A model generated the notes under the pieces. The model was not told the DNA's origin. It ran no database searches and saw nothing but the letters and a program-made list of their open reading frames with translations. From IMG/VR virus record IMGVR_UViG_3300042302_000394, positions 143,814 through 207,813 of that record: 64,000 bases of DNA. The stretch is one strand, 5' to 3'. Position numbers and translations under genes: made by a program. Shown in pieces: positions 5,201 to 63,323 of this stretch. Position 1 is the stretch's first letter. Each line of letters starts with the position of its first letter.

Positions 5201-5603
5201 ATAGTGGCTTGCTTCTTAGATAGTTAGGATATCGTTTATTGAAGTTACGCATAATAACTCCTGCTATCTCATGTGCTTGATTTTCATGCGGACTACCTGT
5301 TTCACCACTAGTATCCGTTAGCTCACCTTGCTGATCTTGTTTGTAATGAACCAGCTCGTGTGCCACTGTTCTCAGTATGTCAACAGGGTGACGGTTCTTT
5401 AAGGCAACTAACAGCATATTCTCACTCGGCACGTATGCACCAAAGCTGGGCTGCTCGCCTGTATTTAGATCCGGGGCAAACTGCATCTTAGGCAACTGAT
5501 CTATTTCAAGGATCTCCATAGCTAGAGGTAGAAACTTTTGAAACATTTCCACAACGTTGGCATTTTCCTCTGCGCCTTCAACAATAAACTGACGTGCTCT
5601 CAT
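5199..5603 (-). CDS. Zincin-like metallopeptidase (HExxH)
   Basis: RTVAHELVH followed by E..A.E (PHENQAHE); N-terminus MRARQFIVE. Confidence 0.7.
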   Translation of the reverse strand: MRARQFIVEGAEENANVVEMFQKFLPLAMEILEIDQLPKMQFAPDLNTGEQPSFGAYVPSENMLLVALKNRHPVDILRTVAHELVHYKQDQQGELTDTSGETGSPHENQAHEIAGVIMRNFNKRYPNYLRSKPL

Positions 5604-5611
5604 AGCAGTAT

Positions 5612-8600
5612 TTAGCGCCGAACAAAATGATAATCACCGTCGGGTCCGTTGTTGCTAAAGATACCCAAACAGTCGAACCCTTGTGTGTCCATATATGCTA
5701 TTACATCATCTTTTAACGGGGCACCTTTATTGTATTCTACAACCTGTAGTTCTAGAATAACATGTTTCACTGTGGATAATGTTTCTACAGCACCCTTTAG
5801 CACATCTAACTCTGCACCTTGTACATCCATTTTAATCATATCTGGGGGAGGAAAGTTTTTAAGGCGGCGTACAGCATCTAGGGTCACTGTCTTTAGCCTA
5901 CGACGATGTGTTTCGTTAAAGTAGTTGACTGTTTCGGGATTTACTTCTTCGTTTTCTTTGTAATAACTGTTGCCACCCGGATGTACATCATTTTGATAGA
6001 AGTCAACTTCTTTGCCACTCTGGTCACTTAGCACACCCATATGATATTGCAAATTACGTTCTTTATATAGGAACTCGCTACTGTCCATTGCTTCAAATAC
6101 AACATACTTTGCTCGATCCCAAATACGTTGTGCTTCGTTAGTCCAGTGCAGAACACATGCACCGATATCGTATATAACCTTTGGTTCAAACCCTTCATTC
6201 TTGAGTTTGGCAAGATAATCTACATGGTTACGAGGAATCAGTCGTTGACTTCCTAACTCCCGTAAACGATCCTGTATGTTAAACGGTGTTACATCTGGGG
6301 CAGCAGTAATGGCATTATCTACATTAAAAGTAAAGCTGCCAGTATGGCTGCATAACACACTGGGATCTGCCCAAATTTTAAATCCTTTGTCCCGGGCCTT
6401 GCGACAGAAATCTACATCTTCTGAAACAGTGTTCCTATGATCGATAGCACTATAATACTTAAATTGTGGATAACCTATTTCACACATAACTTCTGCTTTG
6501 ACTAGAGCACAACCAAATCCACAGCCGGCAATTTCAACTAAAGGTCTACCCTTTAGCTTTTCATACGGCATATTGCTTACTCCGCCATTCTGATTGTGTT
6601 CATATATTTCTAAAATATGTAATCCAGGTTTACGTTGTATGTATAAACCGCTGACAACATCCTTATCGTGCGATAGCAACTTTGACAGTGTGTTAGGAGG
6701 GAAGCTAATATCACTATCTACACTGAATAGATAATCAAATCCTTTTACTACCCAGTCGGCAATCAAGTTGCGTACCTGATCAATATTGTATCCGTAAAAA
6801 TATTGGAACGTTGCTTCGTAGCCCTCGGGGATGATTAAGTCATAGATACTTTTAAAAGTTTCCGGTTCAATATTACGAGCTGTTGGAATTGCTATGAGAA
6901 TCTTTTTTTTAGATGGATTCATTTTTTTAATAATAGATTTAGCTGCTACGTTTTGTTCAATAGCATTTACTTTGTAATCGTTGAGTGGATTAACATCATT
7001 GTAATTATATACAATATCTTGTAGACATTTAACTTTACTAGGATCAGCATTTTCGATTAGTGCATAGAAAATACTGCCGTCACCGCCTGCCTTATACCAT
7101 GCACCTGTGTCATCTTGGAATAGGCTATCGTCTAGACCGTCAATTAACTGTTGTTTAAATGTGCGTAGGTGTGTGTAAGGTAAGATCCAATTAAAGTGAT
7201 GATTCCTGTATTCTTTGCTGTTCTTTACGTGCTCGGGATAAGGCTGACTAATCAATGGAATATTATCAACCATTGACCAGCAACTACCGTAGGTAAATTC
7301 TGTTGTGCCGTCATACACATTGTTATAGTAGCTGAACACAGTGTTGTCATTAACTAGACTGTCGTCACCGTCGAGTATCATTACAATAGCATTGGGATCT
7401 TGTAGACTTCTAAATGTATCTATTTGATTTTTTACTGCGCCTACGTTATTTTGATTTTCAATAACTTCAAACTTGGCTCGAATGTGTGCAGGATAGGCTG
7501 ACAGTGCAGTGTACAATGCTTCCAGTGTATTATCAGTACTTGCATCGTCTACCAAAATACATCGATAGTTGTCGTAGTCTTGTGTAGCAATACTGTTGAT
7601 GCAACGTGCAATATAATTTTTGCAATTGTAGAATGTGCTAACAACCACAATAGGTTGCTCTGTTCCCGGCTTGTAATCTTCTAATTCAACTGTATTATGA
7701 AACTTGCGATTGTAAATCTTGTGCAGTCTGTGGTTGATTTTGCTAACAGCACGATAGTCACTGCTGCTTAGATAATGTCCTGTCTTTTTATAAAAATGCT
7801 GCTTCCATTGCAGTGCTACACTGTCCCAACCCGCAATGTCTTTAACAATGTTGCAATAGTATTGTTTCTGTTGATGTAGATACGGATTACGATATGCTTC
7901 TACCGTGGTCTTGACAAACTGTTCAACCTGTGTTGGTACACTGATATCCGGAAACAGTCCATTGGGTTCAATAGCATAGTCAATTAAGTAACAAGCACCT
8001 GCCACTGCAATTTCTTCTAATGCACCAAAGCGGCAAGTTATGATAGGAGTGTTGTAGCATAAACTCTCCATTGATGAAATGCCGTAGGTTTCCGGAAACG
8101 CTGCCGGATACAGCATGAAGTTAGCAGTAGTTAGTATATCGGCAATTTCTTTCTGCGGTATAACACCTGTAAATTCTATACCTTGTGCTGCTAGCTGCGG
8201 ATCAGCAGCCATCTCGCGCCAATCTTTTTCTTGTTGATCAGGTTCTGCATTTGTGCTAAATCTATAGTAGCCGCCTATGACTTTTAGTTTAGCTTCAGGT
8301 ATATGTCGCTTGACATGTGGCCAGATCATTTTAACCAGCGGAATCATTCCTTTGGTCACTGATGCATTATAAACAAACAAATTCTTATCTTTGGCTTTGA
8401 TATCCACTTCGCGATTATAGATGCGTACACCGTTACGTGTGATGAACATCTTACGCTTTAGTACTTCGAAGTTTCGTCTGCGGCCATGATGACAGTTAGT
8501 AACATAGGTTAGGTGGAAATCGCTTAGTGTAAAGATGTCTGTAATTCTATCTGCAACAGCAAGCTCTTCGATCAAGTTATCGCCTAGACAGAATGTGTCG

Positions 8601-8980
8601 TGCATCCACAATACTCGCATTTTAGCTTTACTGATAATCCTGTCGTATAGATTCATAGACATGAATGGTACACTGCGATTATCGTTTAATCTCGGATAAT
8701 CTTTCGGATCAGTGAATGGAATAATTGTGCGACTGCTTATAACAATATCAAACTCGTGATTGTTAGCTAGATCTGTAAGTGGCCTATAAGTTACTGTGTC
8801 GTACTTGCCAGGTACTGCATGATCAATGTTACAGTTATTGAACACTGTAACATCAAATCCAATTTGTGCGAGTTCCCTACTCATTAGGATAACAGCACTT
8901 TCGCTGCCTCCTAGTCCTTGTTTGAATACCGTAGTTCCGTCGTATGGGATGCCGATAATATCTATAATAGCTAGCTTCAT
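5612..8980 (-). CDS. Four-domain enzyme: GT4-like (GT-B), GT2, second GT-A domain and FkbM-family methyltransferase
   Basis: GLGGSE and PETYGISSMES (GT4); VVVSTFYN...LVDDASTD...LDGDD (GT2); IAIPT...VDSD...GCGFGC (GT-A); YDIGAC and IKMDVQGAE (FkbM). Confidence 0.9.
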   Translation of the reverse strand: MKLAIIDIIGIPYDGTTVFKQGLGGSESAVILMSRELAQIGFDVTVFNNCNIDHAVPGKYDTVTYRPLTDLANNHEFDIVISSRTIIPFTDPKDYPRLNDNRSVPFMSMNLYDRIISKAKMRVLWMHDTFCLGDNLIEELAVADRITDIFTLSDFHLTYVTNCHHGRRRNFEVLKRKMFITRNGVRIYNREVDIKAKDKNLFVYNASVTKGMIPLVKMIWPHVKRHIPEAKLKVIGGYYRFSTNAEPDQQEKDWREMAADPQLAAQGIEFTGVIPQKEIADILTTANFMLYPAAFPETYGISSMESLCYNTPIITCRFGALEEIAVAGACYLIDYAIEPNGLFPDISVPTQVEQFVKTTVEAYRNPYLHQQKQYYCNIVKDIAGWDSVALQWKQHFYKKTGHYLSSSDYRAVSKINHRLHKIYNRKFHNTVELEDYKPGTEQPIVVVSTFYNCKNYIARCINSIATQDYDNYRCILVDDASTDNTLEALYTALSAYPAHIRAKFEVIENQNNVGAVKNQIDTFRSLQDPNAIVMILDGDDSLVNDNTVFSYYNNVYDGTTEFTYGSCWSMVDNIPLISQPYPEHVKNSKEYRNHHFNWILPYTHLRTFKQQLIDGLDDSLFQDDTGAWYKAGGDGSIFYALIENADPSKVKCLQDIVYNYNDVNPLNDYKVNAIEQNVAAKSIIKKMNPSKKKILIAIPTARNIEPETFKSIYDLIIPEGYEATFQYFYGYNIDQVRNLIADWVVKGFDYLFSVDSDISFPPNTLSKLLSHDKDVVSGLYIQRKPGLHILEIYEHNQNGGVSNMPYEKLKGRPLVEIAGCGFGCALVKAEVMCEIGYPQFKYYSAIDHRNTVSEDVDFCRKARDKGFKIWADPSVLCSHTGSFTFNVDNAITAAPDVTPFNIQDRLRELGSQRLIPRNHVDYLAKLKNEGFEPKVIYDIGACVLHWTNEAQRIWDRAKYVVFEAMDSSEFLYKERNLQYHMGVLSDQSGKEVDFYQNDVHPGGNSYYKENEEVNPETVNYFNETHRRRLKTVTLDAVRRLKNFPPPDMIKMDVQGAELDVLKGAVETLSTVKHVILELQVVEYNKGAPLKDDVIAYMDTQGFDCLGIFSNNGPDGDYHFVRR

Positions 8981-9102
8981 GCTATTAATTATACAGTATA
9001 TCTTAGTAGGGTCAATGATATTGATTTTTACTCATTGATCGGATAATGCTCGTGAAATTAATCTTTTAATAATCTAGGTAAGACTCTGTCAGTGCTGTAA
9101 AG

Positions 9103-25500: not shown

Positions 25501-27216
25501 CAGTGTCGTTGATAATACAGGTGGGCCAACTAGAATAGTAAACTGTTTTGATGTAGTTTGTGTTGCTTGATCCGTTATGGTAACTGTATACTGCGTCTGA
25601 GTAGAAGTAACAGTAGGACGACCAGATATTTGACCAGTTGTAGTACTGAATGTTAATCCAGCAGGTAGTGCCGGACTAATTGCATAAGATAAAGTTAAAT
25701 ACCCACCGCTAGCAGATACTGGAGTAAATGCCGTAATGGTAGTATTTTTAATGAATGTACTAGTTGCAACTAGTAGTGTTGAATTAAGAGCAGGTAATGC
25801 TTCAACTGTTAAACTAAAAGTTTTGCTGCTAACTTGTGAAGGACTACTAGAGTCAGTAACTGATACAGTGTAAGTCGAAGCTGCAATGGCTTCAGTGGCC
25901 GTGCCCGATACTACCCCAGTTGATGTGTTAAAACTTAACCCAGCAGGCAATGCTGGACTAATTGAAAATGCTAAAGGCGTTATACCACCGCTAGCAGTTA
26001 CTGGAGTAAATGCTGTGAACGCAATAGTTCTAATTAGAGTTCTACTAGAAACATTTTGTACAGTAATTAGCGCCGGAGGAAGTATTTCTAAACTAAAAGT
26101 CTTACTGCTAGTAGCACCAGAACTGTCGCTAACAGTAATAACAAAATTATTCTGTGCAAAAGATACAGATGGTGTTCCTGAAATAAATCCTGTTGCAGTA
26201 TTAAATGTTAGTCCTGCAGGTAATGCAGGATTGATAGAATATGTTAAAGTTCCAATTCCGCCTGTACCATTAACTGGTTTAAATGCGGTAATAGATAAAT
26301 TTTGTGTAAGTGTTCTACTTGCCGTGTCTAGTGTAGAACCCAATTGGGTTGCTCCTGCGGCAACAGCTAATGTAAATGTTGCACTGCCTGTTTGACCGCT
26401 AGCATCTGTAAAAGTCATTACATATGAAGTAGATGGCGATGCTACTGTAGGAGTTCCGGCGATAACAATATCAAGATAGTTGTACCAGTAATTAACTGTG
26501 TCCGCTGCTGTTATCGATTTAACAGTAGCATCAGTGATACTAACAGTTGCACCTGTATTCCACGCAACCTGTCCTATCGGTGATGTTCCTCCGCTTAGAC
26601 TAGGATTAGCATTATATCTAAGCGTGATTGTGGATACTGTAACAGCAGTACATTCCCATATTCCGTTGTAGCTGGTTTTAGTTTGTCCTCTTACTGCGTA
26701 AAAACTTCCAGCAACAGGAGTTTGTCCGTTAGAAGTATATTGATATGTTACAGACCACGAAGTTCCAGATCCTGATATAGTAGGAGCAGTGCCAGAGACA
26801 TTTAGATCAACTCTAGTTTTTTTAATAGCAAGTCCAGCAGGCAGTGCAGGATTGATACTAACATTTAAAATTTCAGTTGGTATCGCACTTCCGCCGTACA
26901 CACTTACCGGATTAAAGGTGGCCAGTGTGCCTTGTGTAAAATTCAATGTAGGAACTAAGGTCGTTGCTACAATATTAGGCGGAGTAGGAGGTGAAGCTAG
27001 ACCGGGAAATCTAGAACCTGTTACGCCCAGGTAAGGTTTTGTTAAATCGTAGTTGCCCAGTGTAATCTTACCAGCAGACAACCCAGTACCTAATACGCCC
27101 GTTCTGGCAGCGCCGTTTTGGTTGATATAAGCGTCTTGAGCACCGAAGTAATTGTCACCTGCTACAGTAGCGGGTGCAGGTTGAGCTGTTGGATAGGGAA
27201 AGTAATAAATGGTCAC
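22594..27216 (-). CDS. Large virion protein with tandem putative-Ig (He_PIG-like) repeats and a collagen-like tail
   Basis: More than 10 repeats of [YF]SISP.LP.GL.FNT.TG.I.GTPT; GFTGSQ tract; GTG start 7 nt after TAAATA. Confidence 0.85.
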   Translation of the reverse strand: MTIYYFPYPTAQPAPATVAGDNYFGAQDAYINQNGAARTGVLGTGLSAGKITLGNYDLTKPYLGVTGSRFPGLASPPTPPNIVATTLVPTLNFTQGTLATFNPVSVYGGSAIPTEILNVSINPALPAGLAIKKTRVDLNVSGTAPTISGSGTSWSVTYQYTSNGQTPVAGSFYAVRGQTKTSYNGIWECTAVTVSTITLRYNANPSLSGGTSPIGQVAWNTGATVSITDATVKSITAADTVNYWYNYLDIVIAGTPTVASPSTSYVMTFTDASGQTGSATFTLAVAAGATQLGSTLDTASRTLTQNLSITAFKPVNGTGGIGTLTYSINPALPAGLTFNTATGFISGTPSVSFAQNNFVITVSDSSGATSSKTFSLEILPPALITVQNVSSRTLIRTIAFTAFTPVTASGGITPLAFSISPALPAGLSFNTSTGVVSGTATEAIAASTYTVSVTDSSSPSQVSSKTFSLTVEALPALNSTLLVATSTFIKNTTITAFTPVSASGGYLTLSYAISPALPAGLTFSTTTGQISGRPTVTSTQTQYTVTITDQATQTTSKQFTILVGPPVLSTTLAISSRTLIQNSQVSAPFTPVTASGGEGTLTFAISPSLPSGLSFNTATGQITGSSTVVSANTNNTVTVTDSNSTPQTSSKTFSLKVDPAPILIISSIGTKTLVQNLADTPFIPITATGGFGTLTFAINPALPTGLNFNAATGQVSGTATIFRTATNHTVTVSDQATQSASESFSLTVETPPLQAQQSVAGSTLIRTVPISAFTPVTATGGSLIYSYGVAPNLSAGLAFSTSTGQITGTPTVVSTETTYTVTVTDSLSQTASNTFKITVNEPPPLTTTLVISSATFNRVTDTISIVPVSASGGFGSISFAISPSLPAGLSFNSGNGRISGVATVLVNQTYTITANDSIAQVSSKQFNLTLNNPPVTATTVIASTTATRTKETTAFKPVNGAGGIAPLVYSISPSLPATMTLNVNTGLVGGKPNSLLTATSFTVIVSDSVGSSNSSTFLLTVIDPPPVNTVLSTASVELVISQTITPVIPVTATGGDGTLVFSISPSLPTGLQFASSTGRITGTPVALLTSTNFTVTVTDSLSQTSSNTFSLSVIAQPLVAVVNNPTIVLTEYVQITAVSPVTATGGTGSKTYSISPSLPIGLTFNTASGQITGTPTTESSATYTVTALDSVGITASANFNLVVNDAVPPSLVAAPQNSDVALELNAETEFQPVIVSGGFGAVTYSISPNLPAGLSFNTATGFITGIPTVLTNSAAFTVTVQDTVPQTASATFNLIVVFTPVAGGKGFTGSKGYTGSIGFTGSQGITGFTGSQGIAGDLGYTGSQGVGFTGSRGESGFVGSVGYTGSIGFTGSQGAGFTGSQGETGFVGSVGYTGSQGTGFTGSQGETGFVGSVGFIGSIGYTGSQGSGFTGSQGETGFTGSKGDLGYTGSQGIPGEYAAVGYTGSAGSGSSIKIVDQTTTITNTVTSITFLGDGVSAVSSGTGAVVVTISGGSGASGNYDGGTPDSNHVGITALDAGYIV

Positions 27217-27239
27217 AGTATTATATTTACCCTATTTTA

Positions 27240-28931
27240 TTATGCTCTCACTGTCAAGTCTAATATGTCAAAATATCCTAATCCAGTATCGTAACAAATG
27301 AATATAGCAGCATTGACATCATCATAGTAATAGTCACCGGGTTTAAGATCGCTTAGGCTTAATCCGTTTGCAGCATCTGCATTGGTATACATTCTAGGTG
27401 CAGCTGACAGTTGTCCCGAGCCATCTGGAAATACTAGGGTGTAACCCGATTGTATAGTAATAGAACCGATACCGTCTGAAACAAGACCTTCTACGGCACT
27501 ACCTGTATAGCCAATGTCCCCTTGACTACCTGTATAACCATCACGTCCTATTACACCGTCAACACCTGCACTACCTGTGAATCCAATACTACCTGTATAA
27601 CCTAGATCACCGGCGCTGCCTACATCACCTTTTTCTCCTTGCGAACCTACATAACCTACGTTGCCTCTCGAACCTACATAGCCCACATCGCCTTGTGAAC
27701 CTACATAGCCCACATCGCCTTTTTCTCCCTGCGAACCTACATAACCTACGTTGCCTCTCGAACCTACATAGCCCACATCGCCTTGTGAACCAGTATATCC
27801 ATCTATGCCTTGGCTACCAGTAAAACCAATACTTCCAGTATACCCTAACTCTCCCTGCGGTCCTACAATATTTCCAACATCTAACCAATCATCACCGACC
27901 CAAATGTTTAAGTGGCCATTATCAGATGTAATGTATCCATCACCGATATTTCCTAGATAGGACCCGGGGAGAGTTGCGTAGGTAGAAGTACTACCTAAAA
28001 TCTGTACACTAGTACCGTCAGTACCTCGACTACCCACATAGCCCACATTTCCCTGACTACCTGTAAATCCTAATTCTCCTTGTGAACCCGAGTATCCAAT
28101 GCTTCCAGTAAAACCTAGATCACCTTGACTACCTGTAAATCCTAATTCACCTTGTGATCCGGTAAAACCTTGTGATCCAGTATATCCACGACTTCCAGTA
28201 AATCCTATATCGCCTTGACTACCAGTAAATCCAGTATCACCAACTGATCCATCAACACCGGCACTTCCAGTAAATCCTATATCGCCTTGACTACCAGTAA
28301 ATCCAGTATCACCAACTGATCCATCAACACCGGCACTTCCAGTAAATCCAGTATTGCCTTGACTACCAGTAAATCCAGTATCACCAACTGATCCATCAAC
28401 ACCGGCACTTCCAGTAAATCCAGTATTGCCTTGACTACCAGTAAATCCAGTATCACCAACTGATCCAGTATAACCTACATTCCCTTGACTACCTGTAAAA
28501 CCTTGACTGCCTGTGTAGCCCGTATATCCGAGATTTCCCTGAGATCCAGTGTACCCGGTATCTCCACGCGAGCCTGTATAGCCAATATTACCCTGCGAAC
28601 CTGTATAGCCTGTAGGGCCTTGTATTTTTCCTACATCAACCCAAACTGTCCCGTCCCATACCCATAAATTTCCAGTGGCTTCTTCAATAAATCCATCACC
28701 GGAATCGCCTGCGTAACTAGTTTCCAATTGAGTACTATTAGATACGCTGCCTGTAATAGTAACGCCACTACCCGAACCATTAAATTGCAGTAATCTGCCG
28801 CCAGGGGTAACGCCGTCACCTATGCGTAGGTCCCCTAATGTCTCATCATACCAAATTGTGCCCTTGTCCCCTACCCAGTCGTAAGAATTGACAGTTATTA
28901 TTCTACCGGCTTGTATTTTATAGATTGGCAT
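27240..28931 (-). CDS. Collagen-like fibre protein with G[YF]TGSQ repeats
   Basis: [12 protein letters not shown]-terminus and long [17 protein letters not shown] tracts with exact DNA tandem duplications. Confidence 0.85.
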
Positions 28932-28952
28932 AACGATATTTATCGTATGCTG

Positions 28953-29243
28953 TTATCTTGACATTAATGCTTTTAGTTGTTGAATAATGTCGTTCTGCTC
29001 AGGGGGCTCTTCGCCCACTGTTTCCTGACCTGTTAGTTTGTCTATAACAGGGCTGTCTTTGCCTGCTGCGGCTTTAGCAAGTTCTAGTTCTTGCTGCTGT
29101 GGGCTGATCATCACAGGATTTTGCTGCAATTCTGTATCGGCTTCCTCGGGTGGGTTTTGACCAGCAGCATTAACCACAGGATCTTCATCACCATTAATTG
29201 TAATGGTAATAGGTACATTAATGGTGAATTCTTTTGCTCTCAT
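28953..29243 (-). CDS. Acidic hypothetical protein, putative capsid-internal protein
   Basis: Starts MRAKEF; TAAATA-4nt-ATG. Confidence 0.7.
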   Translation of the reverse strand: MRAKEFTINVPITITINGDEDPVVNAAGQNPPEEADTELQQNPVMISPQQQELELAKAAAGKDSPVIDKLTGQETVGEEPPEQNDIIQQLKALMSR

Positions 29244-29381
29244 GATGTATTTAGTTGCCGGTTACTTAATCCGGCGCCGAATTTTTTATGGCTCAGCAGT
29301 GTAATTACGCCGGCAATTTACGTTTGCTAGACGGACGCCTGCCCGGTGGGCTAACCGTTACGACAACGGACCTAAGGTGGT

Positions 29382-29822
29382 TTAGTTACACCAACTTTGT
29401 TTAGCATCGCCGTAATATTCGCGTGCTAGACCGTTGGCAATTAATCCTTGACGAATGCTCTGTCCATTGACTAAGATGTCTCCTAGAATGCGACCGCCAA
29501 ACTTGTCCCAACCGTAGATGATAACTTGATGTTTAGGGTGGGATTGAATCGCATGTGTGGTAAATTTGCTGGCCACTAATGCTCTCTCGTTTTCTTGCGG
29601 GCACTGTGCTCTGTGTCCTTTTTCCGGAGTATCAACACCAAATATACGAACTGCTAGTTCTGGCTTTAGTGGAGCAGGAAGGAATGGTGCTGCAATCACA
29701 ATAGTGTCACCGTCGCTTACACGTATAATCTGTGCGTCATAAGTTGCACCTTTAGGTGTCTTTTGTGCTAGAGCAGGAACTGCCGCCACTGCTAATAATA
29801 GGGTTAATAATAGTTTTTTCAT
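29382..29822 (-). CDS. Thermonuclease (SNase-like) with signal peptide
   Basis: MKKLLLTLLLAVAAVPALA signal; DGDT, RIFGVDTPE, DKFGGRILG motifs; start moved to ATG 29822. Confidence 0.9.
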   Translation of the reverse strand: MKKLLLTLLLAVAAVPALAQKTPKGATYDAQIIRVSDGDTIVIAAPFLPAPLKPELAVRIFGVDTPEKGHRAQCPQENERALVASKFTTHAIQSHPKHQVIIYGWDKFGGRILGDILVNGQSIRQGLIANGLAREYYGDAKQSWCN

Positions 29823-29829
29823 AATGTAT

Positions 29830-31542
29830 TTAAGTAATTTCTTGCCAGCCAATTTGTGCCAGCACGTCTGCGTTGTTTGATGTTGCTGCCATAGTTAGTG
29901 TCACAATATCGCTGACTCCTGCCAATGTTCTGCCTAACTGAAACGCAAACGCATCTGCTCCTAGTTCCGATAGTTCTCTACTGCTGACATAACCAGTTTG
30001 TAGTTCTATACCGCCCGAAACTCCTGTGGCGGCCGTGTCATATTCAACAGTTCCTGAAGTACTGGTTCCTGCCCAAGTAGCACCAGTTAGGGTAGGGTTT
30101 AGCACCAATCTCCAACGATAGTAATTCACTGTGGGACTCAGCACATCCACTTGTCTGGGCAACACAATAGCATCTAATCTTGTGCTGGCCAATCTAATGC
30201 TGACCAACGGATAGTATGTTCCGGCATTGACCAATCTCAACACACTGGTGCCACGTCCTGCTGATTCGCTGTAGGTAAATGCGTTGTAGCCACCTTCGCT
30301 GATTACAGTGGAGCATATCTGTCTCATCATACTGGATGAAGCAGTGGCTCCAGTATTGGTTATTTCATAACGCACTGGCAGTACAGCCGTGGTCATATAA
30401 GTGGTGGTATTATTCACAACATTGGCATGATGGAATGTGTGGCAAAGCACATAAGCACCGTTGACAACAAATCCACAGCGAACACTTCCCACGCCCAACC
30501 ACTCAATGTCTGTCCAAAATATCTGTGTCCTGTCTACATTTAATGCGGCGAATGGATTGTCCCAAGCGTCTTGTCTTATCCTATCTTCAACCAACGCACC
30601 TGTACTATAACTTCTTATTACCAAATAGTTATATGCGCCATCATTTTCAAAATAGACTCCGTTGTTGGTGGTAAAATATCCCACACGCTGACGCAGGTTG
30701 GCCTTGGGAGTGTTCATGGCAAAAGTGGCCAACACCAGCAGACTCTTGCCTGGCTGATAAGGAAAAACTCTTTTGGTTTCTCGTATGACACTGGATCCAT
30801 TACTTGTGCTCACTGCCAGTCTAAATGTAGAACTGTCTGTTTCGTAGACCACTGTGCCGCCAGTGCTGGTGCTACTGCTAAAATCATTGTGGTCGTAATA
30901 TCTTGCTCTACTGTCAAACAGTGTATAAGGCTCACTGACTCGCAGTCTACCAAACGCATCAGTAGATCCTGTGCCCAATGTAAATGTGTTAGTGCCAGTT
31001 AGTGTGGCAGTTACCGTACCACTGACGGGTATAGGATTACCTGAATCGTTTTTAATCTCTACTTCCGGAAGGCTTGAGATAGCAACTGTGCCAGTTATAG
31101 TCCACGGTATTGTACCTTGGTATACTGTGGAGGTGGTTGGAAAGTTAGTTACAGCAAAACTGGTGTTGCTGATTGTCAGTGTATTGCTTACAAATACAGT
31201 TGAAGTAAAATTACTTACTGTGACTGTTCCTGTGATAGCAGGTAGAGAAGAAATATTTACAGTTGATGTAAAATTGCTGACTACAACTTGTCCGTTGGTT
31301 CCTATGCTAACTGTCCAGGTGCCTTCTTGACGAACACTAATGCTTTCTAATGCAGCCAGTGTTGATGTACTTAAACTTACAGTGTCAACAATAACATCAC
31401 CTTCAAGATTGATACCATCAACATGTACACGAGCCACGGGTTGCCCCTGGCTGTTGTACTGCATAGTCTTATGAATATTTAGAAGATTGCTCTCCTGTGG
31501 ATGTTCATAGGCTGTGCTGTTCTGATAGCGATCAACCGCCAT
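29830..31542 (-). CDS. Virion structural protein
   Basis: S/T-rich VSNF repeats then a DAFGRLRVSEPYTLFD...YQPGKS...EWLGVG domain typical of phage virion proteins. Confidence 0.7.
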   Translation of the reverse strand: MAVDRYQNSTAYEHPQESNLLNIHKTMQYNSQGQPVARVHVDGINLEGDVIVDTVSLSTSTLAALESISVRQEGTWTVSIGTNGQVVVSNFTSTVNISSLPAITGTVTVSNFTSTVFVSNTLTISNTSFAVTNFPTTSTVYQGTIPWTITGTVAISSLPEVEIKNDSGNPIPVSGTVTATLTGTNTFTLGTGSTDAFGRLRVSEPYTLFDSRARYYDHNDFSSSTSTGGTVVYETDSSTFRLAVSTSNGSSVIRETKRVFPYQPGKSLLVLATFAMNTPKANLRQRVGYFTTNNGVYFENDGAYNYLVIRSYSTGALVEDRIRQDAWDNPFAALNVDRTQIFWTDIEWLGVGSVRCGFVVNGAYVLCHTFHHANVVNNTTTYMTTAVLPVRYEITNTGATASSSMMRQICSTVISEGGYNAFTYSESAGRGTSVLRLVNAGTYYPLVSIRLASTRLDAIVLPRQVDVLSPTVNYYRWRLVLNPTLTGATWAGTSTSGTVEYDTAATGVSGGIELQTGYVSSRELSELGADAFAFQLGRTLAGVSDIVTLTMAATSNNADVLAQIGWQEIT

Positions 31543-35789: not shown

Positions 35790-36008
35790 TTATTTTGAAC
35801 GATATACTATACGACATTTAGTTAAGTCGTATGGGCTCATTTCTACCCTAACTCTATCCCCTAACAGTATTTGAATTCTGTTCTGTCGCATCTTGCCCGA
35901 GATGAATCCCAGAACTGCGGAACCTTGTTCCAACCTTACCCGAAACATTGCGTTGGGTAGTACTTCTTCGATCCTGCCCTCAAGGCTGATCATATCTTCT
36001 TTAGCCAC
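35790..36008 (-). CDS. infA: Translation initiation factor IF-1
   Basis: [19 protein letters not shown]...[28 protein letters not shown]; 72 aa. Confidence 0.97.
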
Positions 36009-37949: not shown

Positions 37950-37989
37950 ACTACTATTTACACTATAAATATCCAAGCAGGAGAAAAAC

Positions 37990-40329: not shown

Positions 40330-40438
40330 ACTTTAATTTCAATATTTTTTTCAAGACTAGGAACCCTAAATATAGCATCTATTTACTGAGAGATCAAATG
40401 TTGTTAATATAACAGTATTTTATTTAATAAATACCGCT

Positions 40439-42403
40439 ATGCCTGATAGATCTATACAATTACTAACTGATGTTTTTCCAAATTCAACTACAAATCATGG
40501 TAATTTGAACAATCCCGATATAATACTAGTCCAGGCACCTGGATGGGGAGTGCAAACAGCTCCGCTTTCTTTAGCATCACTTTCAGCCTATGTTCGGCAG
40601 AAAGGATACAAGATTTTACCATTAGATTTAAATGTTGAATTTTTTGCTATTAGACCTGAGAAATTTTCCATAATGTGGGACATAGATCAATCTCAGTGGT
40701 TTTGGGAATCTAAAGACTGCGTTAATGACCTGTTAACCGAATACAAAAAAGAAATTGATGACTTTGTCGAGTTAGTGGTGTCGACTAATACACCATTAGT
40801 TGGATTTAGTTTATACAACACTTCAATGCATACTTCGATGCATCTTATCAAACTGCTCAAAGCACGTAAGCCTGAGCTAAAGATTATTGTCGGTGGTCCT
40901 CATGCCCACCGATATCTAGCTGGTAATGTTTTGGCAAAAAATCCGTTAATAGATGCAGTCGCCCAGGCTGAGGGAGAAGAAACATTAGTAGACATAATTG
41001 AGCGTGTTCGAAAAAATCAATCATTGCTCGATTGCCCTGGATTGTTAGTGTTTAAAGACGGAGCAGTACATGCTACTCCAACAAGGCCAATGATTCCAAA
41101 AATCGACACTCTTCCGATACCCCACTACAGTGATTTTTCATTAGCTCCTTACCTATCCCCAACACGATTACCAATGGCGTCTAGTCGAGGGTGTCCTAAT
41201 AAATGTATATTCTGTAATGAGCAACCTTATTGGGAATCATATCGATTTCGGTCTGCAGAAAGCATGATTGAAGAAGTTAAGTACCAATTAAAATTATATC
41301 CTGAAATTGACTTTATTGACTTTCAAGATAGTTTATGTAACGGGAAGATAAGCGCAATTGAAAAGTTTGCCGAATACCTCATTGAAAATAAAATTAAAAT
41401 ACAATGGGCCGGACAGGCAGTTATTAGAAAAGAAATGACCGAAGAACTGATGATAAAATTAAAACAGTCCGGATGTGTGGTCATGGCCTACGGATTAGAA
41501 ACTCCAAACCCTACACTTATGAGGAGTGTAGGAAAGTTATTATCAAAAGGTGCCGATATTGATAAAATTGCTGAATCTCATGCAAGGACCGGACTTAATG
41601 CAGTTTACAATGTCATGTTTGGGTTACCGGGAGAAACTGAAGAAGATTCATTAATGGTCTTAGAGTTTTTAAGACGTAATTCAAAAAATAAATTATATGT
41701 AAATCCCAGTGCAGCATTTTGCGGATTTGCTAACGGAACTCCTGGATGGGAGAACGCAGAAAAATTCGGTATTGACAAAACACTCGGCGGAACTTTTTGG
41801 AAAAGTGTAGATGGTAATAACACATTCCTAGTTCGATTAAAAAGATTTGAAGATTTTTGTCGATTAGTTTCCGACTTAGGTATAAAAACCACTTATCCGT
41901 CGACATATCTTCTCAATAGAAATCAAGTCATTGCCCAATATTATATTGCAATAGGTCAACCAGAAAAAGCAATATACTATTACACAGAATGGGTTAAAGA
42001 TCATCCCGAAGATCAAATAGCTAAAAAGTTTTTATTCGAATATTCAGGTTTCTTAAAAAGTACCCCAAGTTCAAATGTTTATGCAATTAGCCGGCATTCG
42101 GATGAGAATTGGTTAAATGGTGTTGCTAGAAATTGGGGGCCTGCAATATTATTTTCACATGTTCCTTACATTTTAGAAGAATTAACAGTTGGTAAAATTG
42201 TACAGTTTTCAGATCTTCAAACAAGAAAAATAATTAGAGTTGAAGATAATTTTGAAAATGATTGTATTGTAATACACCTCGACGGCACTCATTTAGATGG
42301 AGATCAAGTTGGTTGGCCAAAACTAATAACTGTTTTAGAGGAGCCTAGCAAAGTTATCCCTATTAAGATAGTTAATTACACAGAAATAGATTTTAAAAAA
42401 TGA
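40439..42403 (+). CDS. Cobalamin-binding radical SAM enzyme (class B methyltransferase-like) with C-terminal extension
   Basis: PLSLASL...D.N, VGGPH, EGEE, SRGCPNKCIFC, YGLET, MFGLPGET. Confidence 0.9.
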   Translation: MPDRSIQLLTDVFPNSTTNHGNLNNPDIILVQAPGWGVQTAPLSLASLSAYVRQKGYKILPLDLNVEFFAIRPEKFSIMWDIDQSQWFWESKDCVNDLLTEYKKEIDDFVELVVSTNTPLVGFSLYNTSMHTSMHLIKLLKARKPELKIIVGGPHAHRYLAGNVLAKNPLIDAVAQAEGEETLVDIIERVRKNQSLLDCPGLLVFKDGAVHATPTRPMIPKIDTLPIPHYSDFSLAPYLSPTRLPMASSRGCPNKCIFCNEQPYWESYRFRSAESMIEEVKYQLKLYPEIDFIDFQDSLCNGKISAIEKFAEYLIENKIKIQWAGQAVIRKEMTEELMIKLKQSGCVVMAYGLETPNPTLMRSVGKLLSKGADIDKIAESHARTGLNAVYNVMFGLPGETEEDSLMVLEFLRRNSKNKLYVNPSAAFCGFANGTPGWENAEKFGIDKTLGGTFWKSVDGNNTFLVRLKRFEDFCRLVSDLGIKTTYPSTYLLNRNQVIAQYYIAIGQPEKAIYYYTEWVKDHPEDQIAKKFLFEYSGFLKSTPSSNVYAISRHSDENWLNGVARNWGPAILFSHVPYILEELTVGKIVQFSDLQTRKIIRVEDNFENDCIVIHLDGTHLDGDQVGWPKLITVLEEPSKVIPIKIVNYTEIDFKK

Positions 42404-51929: not shown

Positions 51930-52004
51930 AATGATGTTACAATAGTGTGATATTTATCCTTGATCTCGACATTGACAAATCAGCTTAGATTAAATACTAA
52001 CATT

Positions 52005-52763
52005 ATGAAACGATACAAACATTCAGGTACCATGGGCGACATCATATATGCTCTGCCCATAATGCGTCACTTTGGCGGTGGAGAATTTTATCTACACCTC
52101 AATCAAGTTGACTGGATAGGTCAACACTACTACGGTAGCCCCCCAAACCCATTCCATCAGGGTCGCATGACCCCAAAAGATCTAGACTTCATGCAGAGCT
52201 TTTTCCTGGCCCAGGACTACATCACACGCTGTGATGCACTGGATCCCAAAGAGGAAATCACGCACAATTTGGATCTATTCAGACCCTTGTTCGTGGGTCA
52301 CCCGGGCAACTATGTGGACTGCTACGCAGAAGCATTCAAGATCCGAGAGCCGGGTCTGCGCACAATTTTACGCAATCAACCCTGGCTCACCGTGCCCAAG
52401 CCCACGCCCATTGCGGAAATAGTGGTCAACAGGTCCGCTCGTTGGAACAGTCCCGACAGTCTAACAGGTTGGACAGCCATTCGTGATCAAGCAGAAGATC
52501 GAGCTGTGTTTGTGGGTCTACCCGAAGAGCATCAAGAGTTCTGTAAGTTTGCCAACTGGGCCATACCCTATCATCCCACAGAGACCCTACTGGAGTTGGC
52601 TGAAGTCATTGCGGGTGCGGATCAGTTCGTGGGCAATCAAAGCCTAGGTTTGAGTCTGGCCATAGGACTGGGAGCGGACTGGGCCTGTGAACTACGCAGA
52701 GATCTACCACAGGAACGCAATGAATGCTGGTTCCCGGATCATCCCCGCGGCGAATACTTTTAA
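52005..52763 (+). CDS. GT9 (heptosyltransferase-like) glycosyltransferase
   Basis: HSGTMGDIIYALP...LLELAEVIAGADQFVGNQS...LAIGLG; start moved to ATG 52005. Confidence 0.75.
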   Translation: MKRYKHSGTMGDIIYALPIMRHFGGGEFYLHLNQVDWIGQHYYGSPPNPFHQGRMTPKDLDFMQSFFLAQDYITRCDALDPKEEITHNLDLFRPLFVGHPGNYVDCYAEAFKIREPGLRTILRNQPWLTVPKPTPIAEIVVNRSARWNSPDSLTGWTAIRDQAEDRAVFVGLPEEHQEFCKFANWAIPYHPTETLLELAEVIAGADQFVGNQSLGLSLAIGLGADWACELRRDLPQERNECWFPDHPRGEYF

Positions 52764-54524: not shown

Positions 54525-54651
54525 GTGCTTCCTTTGTTGTTTAAGTATGTATTATAGCATCTTTTGGAGTGCCTGTCTTGTTGTATTTTGAACACAGATC
54601 ATTTGGAGGGTCTTTGGTTGACTGATTGGTAAAACCTTGCTATAATACACT

Positions 54652-54990
54652 ATGACGACACAAACAGTAACCCGTAAGAAGCGTGTAGACCGCAATCATA
54701 TCATCTATGAGCTTGTGGTCAACGGCAAGAACTACATTGGCGTCACAGCTAAGACAGAGAGCACTGTGAACAAGAGTGTTTTGAGTCGTGCCGCTAAACA
54801 CTTCTATCGTGCCAAGACTGAGACTAAGAACTGGCTGCTCTGTGCTGAGTTGCGCACACTGAGCGACAAGAGCGAGATTGAAGTATACGTGCATGAAGTT
54901 ATACGAGGCAAGGCAGAAGCCCACAAGCGTGAAGTAGAGATCCGCAGAATGGTTAAGCCTGTTTTAAATACAGACGTTCGTGGGGACTAA
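54652..54990 (+). CDS. GIY-YIG nuclease-superfamily protein
   Basis: HIIY...NYIGVT...R...H...E...KPVLN; ATG only 5 nt after TATAAT. Confidence 0.7.
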   Translation: MTTQTVTRKKRVDRNHIIYELVVNGKNYIGVTAKTESTVNKSVLSRAAKHFYRAKTETKNWLLCAELRTLSDKSEIEVYVHEVIRGKAEAHKREVEIRRMVKPVLNTDVRGD

Positions 54991-58665: not shown

Positions 58666-58748
58666 CCCTACAGCACATAGGGTCTTTGGTTGCCCTGTGT
58701 ACCTTTTTGCGTTATAATACACACATGTTAAACGAAAAGGAAATTAAA

Positions 58749-60750: not shown

Positions 60751-60926
60751 GCAAGATCGCTGAACTGGCATACGACATTGAGCAACTGTACATCGATGGC
60801 ATGAGTGCCAGAATGATTGCACTGACATTGGATTGCCCCGTGGAGATGGTCTACGGTTGGATTGAAGGCAACAGTGTTGCTGATACGCCACAAGAGGAGG
60901 AAGTCTATTCGCCATATTTTGGTTGA
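60747..60926 (+). CDS. Small helix-turn-helix protein, 59 aa (absent from the ORF track)
   Basis: GAGGAGG RBS, ATGA overlap; LYIDGMSARMIALTLDCPVEMVYGWI fits an HTH pattern. Confidence 0.7.
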   Translation: MSKIAELAYDIEQLYIDGMSARMIALTLDCPVEMVYGWIEGNSVADTPQEEEVYSPYFG

Positions 60927-61008
60927 CAGTTCCTCCAAAAGAGGTTATAATTAATACATGGACAGCGCGGTGCTGTTCGTACACACAGACAAACACAAAG
61001 GAAATTTT

Positions 61009-62066: not shown

Positions 62067-62116
62067 GTAGAGAGTTCGCTCCGAAGTCCTGGGGGTAGTG
62101 TCCCAGGCAAACCCCC

Positions 62117-62158: not shown

Positions 62159-62220
62159 GTGGCAAAAATACAACACCAAAAGAGGTTGACAGAGTGGTAA
62201 AACCTTGCTATAATACATAC

Positions 62221-62493
62221 ATGAACTTAAACAATGTCGACGAAGAATGGTTCCGCAGAGATCGAAGCTTTCGTATCATAGGCAATGATCAAGTAGGCTA
62301 TCATGTCCGAGCCTGTGGAAACCATCGTGTTCTCAGCGATAGAGAAGAGCCCTTAAAGACCCTACAAGACGCAAGGAATTGGTTGACAGAATACTATCCC
62401 GGTGTTATAATACATACATCGCAACAAGGAGCAGTCAATGAGCTACATTGTTTTCAAACACAACAAGGAATACGGTCCACGCAAAGGACTTGA
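62221..62493 (+). CDS. Possible leaderless ORF that reads through the next promoter cassette
   Basis: ATG 6 nt after TATAAT; the C-terminal third overlaps promoter 62383 and the next gene. Confidence 0.35.
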   Translation: MNLNNVDEEWFRRDRSFRIIGNDQVGYHVRACGNHRVLSDREEPLKTLQDARNWLTEYYPGVIIHTSQQGAVNELHCFQTQQGIRSTQRT

Positions 62494-62819: not shown

Positions 62820-63009
62820 AGTCTATCAGGAAACCACACAGTGGACAGACAGCAACGCCGGTAACCATGTCTACATCTTCAACGAGCGGGTTACAGGTCG
62901 AAGTGCCACAGCTATTGCCTACATACCTGCGGGCACAGATCAGGTAAAGAAGTTCCGTACACCGCTCAAGCTGGATCTCAAAGGGCGAACATTTAAAGAG
63001 TTGACTTGA
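62800..63009 (+). CDS. Hypothetical early protein
   Basis: 69 aa; ETT.W...NH.Y...R.F pattern. Confidence 0.7.
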   Translation: MTSKSIKVYQETTQWTDSNAGNHVYIFNERVTGRSATAIAYIPAGTDQVKKFRTPLKLDLKGRTFKELT

Positions 63010-63035
63010 TAAATAATTGACTGTATAATAGAACT

Positions 63036-63323
63036 ATGAAACGAATCCTTACTTCAATCGCACTGATCGCATCCTTGGGCACTGCACAGGCAGCTGGTCC
63101 AGAGGATGTCTTGCTGGGTATCATCCTAGGCGGATTCATAGGCAATTCAATGGCTAAACAACAGCCCGTTCAGCCTCCTGTAATCGTTCAACAACCTCCT
63201 GTGATCTACCAACCACAACCGCAGATCATCTACCAACCCTTGCCCCCACAGCCGGTATGCTACCATACTCCGGTCTATAACGGCTATGGTCAGTTCTTTG
63301 GCTGGCGCACTCACTGTAGATAA
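63036..63323 (+). CDS. Exported or membrane Pro/Gln-rich protein
   Basis: Signal peptide, glycine-zipper-like LLGIILGGFIG, QPPVIYQP repeats; ATG 6 nt after TATAAT. Confidence 0.75.
   Translation: MKRILTSIALIASLGTAQAAGPEDVLLGIILGGFIGNSMAKQQPVQPPVIVQQPPVIYQPQPQIIYQPLPPQPVCYHTPVYNGYGQFFGWRTHCR

What the first reader, a model, noticed from the sequence alone, without database searches (positions are those of the whole stretch)
5603..63036. Systematic promoter-to-start spacing implies widespread leaderless mRNAs in a phage that carries its own IF-1
Seen: TAAATA is followed after 4-7 nt by the start codon, with no Shine-Dalgarno between, at starts 5603 (5 nt), 27216 (7), 28931 (5), 29243 (4), 29822 (4), 32140 (6), 35160 (5), 37949 (5), 38759 (5) and 40439 (5). 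The same holds for TATAAT at 54652 (5), 62221 (6) and 63036 (6). Known: T4-type late promoters are a lone -10 box (TATAAATA) with transcription starting a few nt downstream, and leaderless initiation is sensitive to initiation-factor balance. Inference: many late transcripts start at or near the AUG, and phage infA (35790-36008) may retune ribosomes for them.
Basis: partly seen in the sequence, partly recalled or inferred. Interest (0 to 1): 0.65.

Follow-up and report, generated by a model that had tools for sequence, protein, structure and literature searches.

The report
Promoters abutting start codons: leaderless phage genes
In this lake-water jumbo phage and its close relatives, dozens of genes have a promoter -10 box placed so that transcription should begin on the ATG itself, giving mRNAs with no ribosome-binding leader. 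The more distant relatives tested (T4, RaK2, PA5oct, Phosso, a cyanophage) do not show this. The suggested role of the phage's own IF-1 is untested.

Summary

- **Statistics.** In the 207.8-kb contig, 34 of 172 TAAATA boxes lie 4-8 nt (mode 5) before an ATG that opens a long ORF (P about 1e-23). Among all hexamers, only Shine-Dalgarno words are more tightly tied to starts.
- **Second promoter class.** About 14-15 full sigma-70-type promoters (TTGAC-N17-TATAAT) also sit 5-7 nt from an ATG. The rest carry 20-31-nt leaders with AAGGAG.
- **Geometry.** The T4 late box spans -13 to -6, so a 5-nt gap puts the A of ATG at +1.
- **Relatives.** Complete relatives (357-372 kb) encode a gp55-type late sigma and show the same two-peak spacing. 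Orthologues switch between box-N5-ATG and box-leader-SD-ATG. T4, a cyanophage, RaK2, PA5oct and Phosso show only the leadered peak.
- **Start codons.** Pfam domains begin at residues 1-5 of several of these proteins, which confirms the starts.

Widespread leaderless expression, early as well as late, is therefore the best reading. No RNA data exist to map 5' ends.

The IF-1 idea is weak. IF-1 is real and conserved in the clade. However, Phosso has IF-1 without this architecture, and early leaderless genes must be translated before any phage IF-1 exists. This is a new variant of a known kind; Thermus phage phiYS40 is the precedent.

The parts
5603..5614 (-). TAAATA box (5609-5614), 5-nt gap, ATG at 5603; gene 5199-5603 (134 aa, 'MRA...' small-protein paralogue)
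   Evidence: orthologues in L029 and L042 keep TAAATA-N5-ATG
27216..27229 (-). TAAATA box (27224-27229), 7-nt gap, GTG at 27216; 1540-aa tail-fibre-like gene 22594-27216
   Evidence: This is the only non-ATG start in the class. No orthologue upstream region could be compared.
28931..28942 (-). TAAATA box, 5-nt gap, ATG at 28931; collagen-repeat tail-fibre gene 27240-28931
   Evidence: the G003 orthologue has TAAATA-N4-ATG
29243..29253 (-). TAAATA box, 4-nt gap, ATG at 29243; 96-aa 'MRA...' paralogue 28953-29243
   Evidence: the L033 orthologue keeps TAAATA-N5-ATG, while L050 has an SD (AAAGGA) instead
29822..29832 (-). TAAATA box overlapping the stop codon of the 570-aa virion gene, 4-nt gap, ATG at 29822; 146-aa endonuclease-like protein with a signal-like N-terminus
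   Evidence: orthologues in L033 and L029 keep TAAATA-N4-ATG at 71% identity
32140..32152 (-). TAAATA box, 6-nt gap, ATG at 32140; 100-aa 'MRA...' paralogue 31838-32140
   Evidence: Orthologues split into TAAATA-N5/6-ATG (L029, L025, L023, L017, L024) and TAAATA-N19-with-AAGAGGA-ATG (L050, L048, L045).
35160..35171 (-). TAAATA box, 5-nt gap, ATG at 35160; 95-aa ORF 34873-35160 ahead of the 899-aa collagen-repeat fibre gene
37949..37960 (-). TAAATA box, 5-nt gap, ATG at 37949; 107-aa protein (phrog_17776). It lies back to back with a + strand TAAATA (37966-37971) that serves an SD-led ORF at 37990.
   Evidence: the start is confirmed by orthologues, which are SD-led in L061
38759..38770 (-). 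TAAATA box, 5-nt gap, ATG at 38759; 83-aa ORF
40428..40441 (+). TAAATA box (40428-40433), 5-nt gap, ATG at 40439; B12-binding radical-SAM enzyme 40439-42403
3147..3161 (-). Extra site: TAAATA, 8-nt gap, ATG at 3147; 141-aa ORF
   Evidence: orthologues at 33-43% identity (L038, L044, L050, L045) keep TAAATA-N4/5-ATG
8980..9015 (-). Extra site: sigma-70-type promoter (TTGACC-N16-TATAAT), 7-nt gap, ATG at 8980; 1122-aa multidomain glycosyltransferase/methyltransferase-like gene
51991..52007 (+). Extra, weaker site: TAAATA, 8-nt gap, ATG at 52005 (in-frame upstream alternative starts exist)
54618..54654 (+). Sigma-70-type promoter TTGACT-N17-TATAAT (TG-extended), 5-nt gap, ATG at 54652; 112-aa ORF
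   Evidence: the ORF has no confident family match
58690..58727 (+). Extra site: TTGCCC-N17-TATAAT, 6-nt gap, ATG at 58725; 136-aa ORF
60923..60960 (+). Extra site: TTGACA-N17-TATAAT (12/12 consensus), 6-nt gap, ATG at 60958; 156-aa ORF
62186..62223 (+). TTGACA-N17-TATAAT (12/12 consensus), 6-nt gap, ATG at 62221; 90-aa ORF
63001..63038 (+). TTGACT-N17-TATAAT, 6-nt gap, ATG at 63036; 95-aa ORF, followed by tRNA-Arg(TCT) at 63330-63404
   Evidence: the promoter could instead or also serve the tRNA
35790..36008 (-). infA, phage-encoded translation initiation factor IF-1 (72 aa). It is the last gene of a ligase-orf80-infA unit behind a sigma-70-type promoter upstream of 37547, and is followed by a hairpin plus T-run.
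   Evidence: conserved in G001-G003 at 46-62% identity

Best explanation
The window is the end of a 208-kb fragment of a roughly 360-kb freshwater jumbo myovirus with a T4-type late transcription system. About one gene in six has its promoter -10 element placed 4-8 nt (mode 5-6) upstream of the ATG. Two promoter types are used this way. One is the lone TAAATA late box, read by a gp55-like phage sigma factor on host RNA polymerase core. The other is a full host-type TTGAC-N17-TATAAT early promoter. RNA polymerase should therefore start on, or 1-3 nt before, the A of AUG. The resulting mRNAs have no 5' leader and no Shine-Dalgarno sequence, and would be translated by direct binding of ribosomes (70S plus fMet-tRNA) to the 5'-terminal AUG. 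Genes that are not at the 5' end of a transcript, and the other promoters of both classes, use a 20-30-nt leader with AAGGAG. Over evolutionary time a gene can switch between the two modes. What is shown: the motif, its spacing, its statistics, the confirmed start codons, conservation of the arrangement, and its restriction to this clade. What is inferred: the position of the transcription start and the mode of translation.
For: (1) Spacing statistics and the unbiased hexamer ranking.
(2) The T4 late box occupies -13 to -6 (PMC2988020), so the modal 5-nt gap places the A of ATG at +1. A TATAAT gap of 5-7 nt fits sigma-70 geometry in the same way (established knowledge).
(3) Both promoter classes are bimodal: either 4-8 nt to the ATG, or a 16-33-nt leader containing an SD. 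This is what a promoter predicts and not what a ribosome-binding signal predicts.
(4) The complete relatives G001-G003 each encode a late sigma factor (phrog_12791 E 2e-80; gp55 family phrog_234 E 2e-23) next to a gp47-like gene.
(5) Orthologues at 32-77% protein identity either keep box-N4-6-ATG or carry box-leader-SD-ATG, in both promoter classes.
(6) Start codons are independently confirmed. Pfam domains begin at residues 1-5 for peptide deformylase, a fatty-acid desaturase, an Rv2179c-like exoribonuclease and a metallophosphoesterase. Most sites have no upstream in-frame start, and few window sites have a downstream SD-led one.
(7) Divergent gene pairs are separated by only 18-26 nt, each with its own box 4-6 nt from its ATG, which leaves no room for leaders.
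(8) 34 of 35 TAAATA-class starts are ATG, against about 83% for SD-led starts. The first 36 nt are less structured than in SD-led genes (mean -1.33 versus -2.37 kcal/mol, P=2e-4).
(9) TAAATA counts at gap 4-8: G000 34, G001 25, G002 45, G003 19, against 3-7 (background level) in T4, S-RIM12, RaK2, PA5oct and Phosso. Sigma-70-type counts: 14, 6, 10 and 3, against 0-1.
Against: No transcript 5' end has been mapped. All 24 runs that hold the phage are DNA. The G000 fragment itself has no late sigma gene, so this rests on its complete relatives. No gp45 homologue was found with the T4 sequence, and gp33 was not tested. One site starts with GTG (27216), which is a poor leaderless start in E. coli. 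The small early ORFs at 54652, 58725, 60958, 62221 and 63036 have no homologues that confirm they are coding. Tightly packed genes such as 29243, 28931 and 27216 could also be read from upstream transcripts. The host, and its ability to translate leaderless mRNA, are unknown.
Confidence: 0.75

Rival explanations
1. The boxes are real promoters, but most protein comes from longer read-through transcripts. The SD-less internal AUGs are then reached by termination-reinitiation or 70S scanning, and the leaderless transcripts are a minor product. On this view phage IF-1 would help scanning rather than leaderless initiation.
For: Several sites lie in very short gaps between same-strand genes (28931 is 21 nt after the previous stop; the box at 29822 overlaps a stop codon). 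IF1 is described as strongly stimulatory for 70S scanning (PMC9031893).
Against: Many sites head divergent or isolated genes where no upstream same-strand transcript is expected (1612/1639, 73657/73676, 40439, 8980). The exact +1 geometry and the less structured 5' coding ends are not needed for scanning. According to the same review, scanning ends at a canonical ribosome-binding site, which these genes lack.
Confidence: 0.12
2. TAAATA or TATAAT next to the ATG is an A/U-rich translation signal (a non-SD ribosome-binding site, for example S1-dependent) on mRNAs that start further upstream. It is not a promoter.
For: A/U-rich enhancers exist (established knowledge). Huge phages with S1-like proteins often lack SD motifs (PMC7162821).
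Against: Fourteen other A4T2 hexamers show no such spacing. The TATAAT cases carry a consensus -35 box at exactly 17 nt. The same boxes also occur 20-30 nt upstream of SD-led starts. The box matches the T4 late promoter, and the clade encodes the matching sigma factor.
Confidence: 0.05
3. The phage IF-1 is a specific adaptation that retunes host ribosomes toward leaderless phage mRNAs.
For: IF-1 is full length and conserved in all four clade members. It sits behind a sigma-70-type (early/middle) promoter, so it would be made before the late burst. The clade has IF-1 but no IF-3, whereas the leadered relatives RaK2 and Phosso carry IF-3. IF1 and IF2 stimulate, and excess IF3 inhibits, leaderless translation in vitro (PMC9031893).
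Against: Phosso has IF-1 and TAAATA promoters but no leaderless peak. PA5oct, T4 and S-RIM12 have neither factor and are also leadered, so the comparison amounts to a single evolutionary event. Early leaderless genes must be translated before phage IF-1 exists (inference). IF-1 occurs widely in huge phages, for example the Lak phages. No initiator-like tRNA accompanies it.
Confidence: 0.2
4. The pattern is chance, AT-richness, stop-codon overlap (TAA within TAAATA) or duplication of one promoter-plus-gene cassette.
For: The genome is 41% GC. Three window sites belong to one small paralogue family that begins ATGAGAGCA.
Against: P values are 1e-17 to 1e-25. Other TAA-containing permutations (TAAAAT, TAATAA) score 1-2%. 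More than 30 unrelated genes are involved. The pattern recurs in relatives that are only 45-71% identical.
Confidence: 0.01

Closest known systems
Thermus thermophilus phage phiYS40 (Sevostyanova et al. 2007, as summarised in PMC3594737)
   Same: A large lytic phage whose middle/late genes are expressed mostly as leaderless mRNAs from -10-type promoters, linked to a shift in initiation-factor balance.
   Different: The phiYS40 host phylum (Deinococcus-Thermus) itself uses leaderless mRNAs widely (PMC12340547). In phiYS40 host IF2 goes up and IF3 goes down, and no phage-encoded IF is involved. Here the promoters are T4 gp55-type TAAATA boxes plus consensus sigma-70 promoters. Only about one gene in six is affected, both early and late genes are included, and the phage carries its own IF-1. 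The primary paper could not be read here.
T4-type late promoters (TATAAATA at -13 to -6, gp55/gp33/gp45; PMC2988020) and the ATAAATA late motif of RaK2-like jumbo phages (CBB, GAP32; PMC5259590)
   Same: A lone AT-rich -10 box with no -35 box, a gp55-family sigma factor encoded by the clade, and boxes placed ahead of structural genes. The late sigma factor is 39-43% identical to those of Phosso, PA5oct and RaK2-like phages.
   Different: In T4, S-RIM12, RaK2, PA5oct and Phosso the box lies about 20-33 nt before the ATG, with an SD in between, and there is no gap-5 peak. Here the conserved core is 6 bp (TAAATA) and about 10-20% of boxes abut the ATG.
Leaderless genes of Actinobacteria and Deinococcus-Thermus ('-10 region adjacent to ORF', PMC12340547; mycobacteria, PMC4633059)
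   Same: The same genomic signature: a -10 element a few nt upstream of an ATG, no SD, affecting a sizeable fraction of genes.
   Different: Those are cellular genomes using the housekeeping sigma factor. Here it is a phage clade that uses a phage late sigma factor as well as the host sigma factor, and whose other genes carry strong AAGGAG sites.
Phage-encoded initiation factors in huge phages (Al-Shayeb et al. 2020, PMC7162821)
   Same: IF1 and IF3 genes in phages larger than 200 kb, proposed to redirect host translation.
   Different: That work makes no link to mRNA architecture. Here IF-1 without IF-3 co-occurs with leaderless architecture in a single clade, which is a correlation only.

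Membership tests
Bacterial-type leaderless mRNA genes | Promoter -10 element 4-8 nt upstream of the start codon, so that +1 falls at or next to the A of AUG | tested here: met
   18 sites in the window and about 48 in the contig, with modal gaps of 5 (TAAATA) and 6 (TATAAT)
Bacterial-type leaderless mRNA genes | No Shine-Dalgarno sequence ahead of the start; AUG strongly preferred as start codon | tested here: met
   The gap is too short for an SD. 34 ATG to 1 GTG in the TAAATA class, against about 83% ATG at SD-led starts.
Bacterial-type leaderless mRNA genes | Mapped primary 5' end at the start codon (5' UTR of 0-5 nt) | not testable with these tools
   No RNA run holds the sequence. The DNA contigs laid on it give no transcript ends.
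Bacterial-type leaderless mRNA genes | The annotated start is the true N-terminus | tested here: met
   Pfam domains start at residues 1-5 in four tested proteins. Orthologue alignments start at residue 1. There are few alternative starts. This is not confirmed for the small early ORFs.
T4-type (gp55-dependent) late promoter system | Lone TATAAATA-like -10 box with no conserved -35 element | tested here: met
   The core is TAAATA and the two upstream positions vary. By inspection of the 36 listed sites, nothing is conserved around -35. No logo was computed.
T4-type (gp55-dependent) late promoter system | Phage encodes a gp55-family late sigma factor | tested here: inconclusive
   Present in the complete relatives G001-G003. 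Absent from the 58%-complete G000 fragment.
T4-type (gp55-dependent) late promoter system | gp45 sliding-clamp activator and gp33 co-activator | tested here: inconclusive
   T4 gp45 finds nothing in G000-G003, but the query is very distant. gp33 was not tested. RaK2-like phages are also reported to lack both (PMC5259590).
Translation initiation factor IF-1 (infA) | Single S1-like OB domain of about 72 aa that aligns end to end with bacterial IF-1 | tested here: met
   PF01176 E 3.6e-25. Residues 1-72 align to solved IF-1 chains at E 3.5e-24. Identity to cellular IF-1 is 57-67%, with no close donor.
phiYS40-type leaderless late programme | Most middle/late transcripts leaderless, with host IF2 raised and IF3 lowered | not testable with these tools
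   Here about 10-20% of TAAATA boxes abut a start and the rest are leadered. Host factor levels cannot be measured.

The most novel reading that the evidence does not exclude
A clade of freshwater jumbo phages has moved a large share of both early and late genes to leaderless expression by sliding gp55-type and sigma-70-type promoters onto the start codon. Its initiation-factor gene set has co-evolved with that architecture: IF-1 is kept and IF-3 is absent, whereas IF-3-carrying sister lineages keep leaders. In other words, phage-encoded initiation factors are matched to the phage's own mRNA 5'-end design.
Probability: 0.2. Interest if true: 0.8.

Novelty: new variant of a known kind. Interest (0 to 1): 0.55.

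Why it matters
Leaderless translation in phages is known mainly from single genes such as lambda cI, and from one Thermus phage whose host phylum is itself rich in leaderless mRNAs. Among jumbo phages with mapped 5' ends, phiKZ showed no leaderless transcripts (PMC8244752) and AR9 had UTRs of 26-491 nt (PMC5312081).

This is a clade-wide, two-promoter-class leaderless architecture in phages that otherwise use strong SD sites. The related phages compared here lack it. That offers a natural system for asking three questions:

- Why would a phage choose leaderless expression, for example to escape host translational shut-off or to be independent of 30S/SD recognition?
- How are T4-type late promoters positioned relative to coding starts?
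- What are phage-encoded initiation factors for?

There is also a practical consequence. Gene callers that require an SD will mis-place starts in such genomes.

Tried and rejected
- **RNA evidence.** The single run search found 24 lake-water DNA runs and no RNA. Laying four of them only confirmed the DNA sequence and showed assembly breaks in the collagen repeats at 27.5-28.5 kb.
- **Near-identical phages.** No match among isolated phages.
- **T4 gp55 and gp45 in the window's own contig.** Nothing found. The contig is only 58% complete.
- **gp45 in the complete relatives.** Nothing found. This is inconclusive.
- **Initiator tRNA as a leaderless booster.** The three tRNA-CAT genes lack the GGG:CCC anticodon-stem hallmark, so there is no support.
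- **Origin of IF-1 and host.** The best cellular matches are 57-67% identical and spread over Proteobacteria, Chloroflexota and Bacteroidales. No donor or host can be inferred.
- **phiYS40 primary paper.** Not held; it is cited through reviews.
- **Families for the small early ORFs.** None found.
- **Rejected explanations.** Chance or composition, stop-codon overlap, and a single duplicated cassette.

Full report
**What the window is.** The window is the last 64 kb of a 207,813-bp IMG/VR viral contig. The contig is linear and CheckV rates it 58% complete. It comes from lake water, and 24 lake DNA runs hold it at 98-99% of sampled words. It encodes:
- many collagen-repeat tail fibres and virion proteins;
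- a radical-SAM gene island;
- a DNA ligase;
- 39 tRNAs elsewhere on the contig;
- a full-length IF-1.

Related IMG/VR contigs include three complete genomes of 357-372 kb: G001 and G002 (71% identity in a virion protein) and G003 (45%). Each of the three encodes a late sigma factor of the T4 gp55 family (phrog_12791 E about 1e-80, phrog_234 E about 1e-23) next to a gp47-like gene. That sigma factor is 43% identical to those of Sinorhizobium phage Phosso and Pseudomonas phage PA5oct, and 39% identical to RaK2-like phages. The phage is therefore a freshwater member of the broad gp55-bearing jumbo myovirus group. Its host is unknown.

**The observation.** I then tested the pattern without relying on gene calls.
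- Of the 172 TAAATA occurrences on both strands of the contig, 16 are followed at a gap of exactly 5 nt, and 34 at gaps of 4-8 nt, by an ATG that opens an ORF of at least 50 codons.
- About 0.63 are expected per gap, giving P=1.6e-17 for gap 5 and P=1.4e-23 for gaps 4-8. Against all other A/T-only hexamers (1.8%), P=9e-25.
- In a scan of all hexamers for "followed at 4-8 nt by an ORF-opening ATG", TAAATA ranks fifth of about 4000, directly behind AAAGGA, AAGGAG, AGGAGA and AGGAGC. Its 14 composition permutations, including other TAA-containing words, score 5% or less.
- The sites belong to more than 30 unrelated genes. A small paralogue family beginning ATGAGAGCA accounts for only three or four of them.
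- Contigs from four lake runs cover the junctions with no differences.

**A second, host-type class.** Promoters of the form TTGAC-N16-18-TATAAT are abundant. There are 14 perfect 12/12 consensus sites, all on the + strand, in 53.5-64 kb alone. Their distance to the next start is also bimodal:
- about 14-15 have the ATG 5-7 nt after the -10 box, including window starts 8980, 54652, 58725, 60958, 62221 and 63036;
- the others have a 20-31-nt leader ending in AAGGAG.

The window holds 18 candidate leaderless starts and the contig about 48. That is roughly one in six of about 300 ORFs.

**Why a promoter and not a ribosome signal.**
- *Geometry.* The T4 late box TATAAATA occupies -13 to -6 (PMC2988020), so a 5-nt gap puts the A of ATG at +1. 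For TATAAT (-12 to -7, established knowledge), a 6-nt gap does the same.
- *Bimodality.* The same boxes occur at two distances, abutting the ATG or about 16-33 nt upstream with an SD between. This holds in this contig and in all relatives.
- *Orthologue switching.*
  - The 32140 family is TAAATA-N5/6-ATG in five relatives and TAAATA-N19-with-AAGAGGA-ATG in others.
  - The 3147 family keeps TAAATA-N4/5-ATG down to 33% protein identity.
  - In the sigma-70 class, the genes at contig positions 26456, 112429 and 127188 each have a promoter-N6-ATG orthologue in G003, L028 or G001. Two of them (112429 and 127188) also have SD-led orthologues in other relatives.
- *Tight divergent pairs.* Divergent genes separated by only 18-26 nt each have their own box 4-6 nt from the ATG.
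- *Confirmed starts.* Pfam domain matches begin at residues 1-5 for a peptide deformylase and a desaturase (TAAATA class) and for an exoribonuclease and a metallophosphoesterase (sigma-70 class).
- *Start codon and structure.* ATG is used in 34 of 35 TAAATA-class starts. The first 36 nt are predicted to be less structured than in SD-led genes (P=2e-4). Both are expected for leaderless mRNAs.

**Clade specificity.** I ran the same scan on nine genomes.

| Genome | TAAATA at gap 4-8 | Total TAAATA | Sigma-70-type promoters abutting an ATG |
|---|---|---|---|
| G000 | 34 | 172 | 14 |
| G001 | 25 | 253 | 6 |
| G002 | 45 | 449 | 10 |
| G003 | 19 | 530 | 3 |
| T4 | 5 | 225 | 0 |
| Cyanophage S-RIM12 | 3 | 136 | 0 |
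| RaK2 | 4 | 306 | 0 |
| PA5oct | 7 | 611 | 1 |
| Phosso | 3 | 141 | 0 |

All the outgroups show a clear leadered peak at about 20-33 nt. In T4 the TAAATA fraction sits at the hexamer median (rank 1310). The abutting arrangement is therefore a derived property of the freshwater clade and not a general feature of T4-type late promoters.

**Known precedents.**
- Thermus phage phiYS40 makes most middle/late mRNAs leaderless and shifts host IF2 and IF3 (PMC3594737).
- A -10 box adjacent to the ORF is common in Deinococcus-Thermus (PMC12340547) and in mycobacteria (PMC4633059).
- In jumbo phages with mapped 5' ends, phiKZ had no leaderless transcripts (PMC8244752) and AR9 had UTRs of 26-491 nt (PMC5312081).
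- The PA5oct and CBB papers report late or AT-rich promoters but no leaderless genes.

I therefore rate this a new variant of a known kind.

**The IF-1 idea.** infA is genuine and is conserved in G001-G003 at 46-62% identity. It has no close cellular donor. It is the last gene of a unit headed by a sigma-70-type promoter upstream of the ligase gene, and it ends at a terminator-like hairpin. It would therefore be made before the late phase.

The distribution of initiation factors is as follows:

| Genome(s) | IF-1 | IF-3 | Leaderless peak |
|---|---|---|---|
| G000-G003 | yes | no | yes |
| Phosso | yes | yes | no |
| RaK2 | no | yes | no |
| PA5oct | no | no | no |
| T4 | no | no | no |
| S-RIM12 | not searched | no | no |

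A review states that IF1 and IF2 stimulate, and excess IF3 inhibits, leaderless translation in vitro, and that IF1 strongly stimulates 70S scanning (PMC9031893). The hypothesis is therefore not unreasonable, and the "IF-1 without IF-3" pattern is suggestive. Three points weigh against it:
- the pattern rests on one evolutionary event;
- Phosso shows that IF-1 does not imply leaderless genes;
- early leaderless genes must be translated by unmodified host ribosomes (inference).

I put about 0.2 on a specific role for IF-1.

**Limits.** No RNA data exist for this phage, so the transcription start is inferred. The late sigma factor is seen only in relatives, because this contig is incomplete. gp33 and gp45 are unresolved. 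The small early ORFs are unconfirmed as proteins, and the promoter before 63036 could instead serve tRNA-Arg at 63330. The GTG start at 27216 is atypical for a leaderless gene.

Noticed in passing
window 40439-50258: A low-GC (34-36%) island of at least four radical-SAM, SPASM or B12-binding enzymes (654, 415, 449 and 981 aa) plus unknown ORFs. It looks like a peptide- or sugar-modification cassette acquired as a block.
   Followed up: partly
window 53500-64000 (+ strand): An array of 14 perfect-consensus sigma-70 promoters (TTGACA-N17-TATAAT, mostly TG-extended), about one per small ORF. Many share a near-identical leader of the form ACATACATCGCAACAAGGAGC. GC content is 45-49%, against 41% for the genome. 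This is probably the early region.
   Followed up: partly
window 5199-5603, 28953-29243, 31838-32140: Paralogous small proteins (96-134 aa, beginning MRA...). Two of the three lie immediately upstream of a tail-fibre gene, and each has its own TAAATA-N4-6-ATG. No family match; possibly fibre chaperones.
   Followed up: partly
window 27500-28500: Collagen-repeat tail-fibre gene. Public assemblies break here and show many skip or go-back joints, so the repeat number may vary or be mis-assembled.
   Followed up: no
G000 83070-92415 (L006 3070-12415): Cluster of 39 tRNA genes on the minus strand, including three with anticodon CAT. None has initiator hallmarks, and one (83677-83750) has an odd predicted fold.
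   Followed up: partly
window 35237-35749 (+): HNH homing-endonuclease gene on the opposite strand, inserted between the fibre operon and infA. It is preceded by an overlapping TGTATAATAAATA element, with both box types in one stretch.
   Followed up: no
window 37955-37971: Back-to-back TAAATA boxes on opposite strands, 5 nt apart. One serves a leaderless gene (37949, - strand) and the other an SD-led gene (37990, + strand).
   Followed up: no
G000 16057-16566 (L002): Phage-encoded peptide deformylase (PF01327, E 7e-41), itself a TAAATA-N5-ATG gene. This is another translation-related function in the phage.
   Followed up: partly
G000 13782-16073, 114138-115535 and 117347-118741: An ATP-dependent protease-like ATPase (phrog_4871), an RNA-binding protein (phrog_850) and a nicotinamide phosphoribosyltransferase. 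These are auxiliary genes typical of jumbo phages.
   Followed up: no
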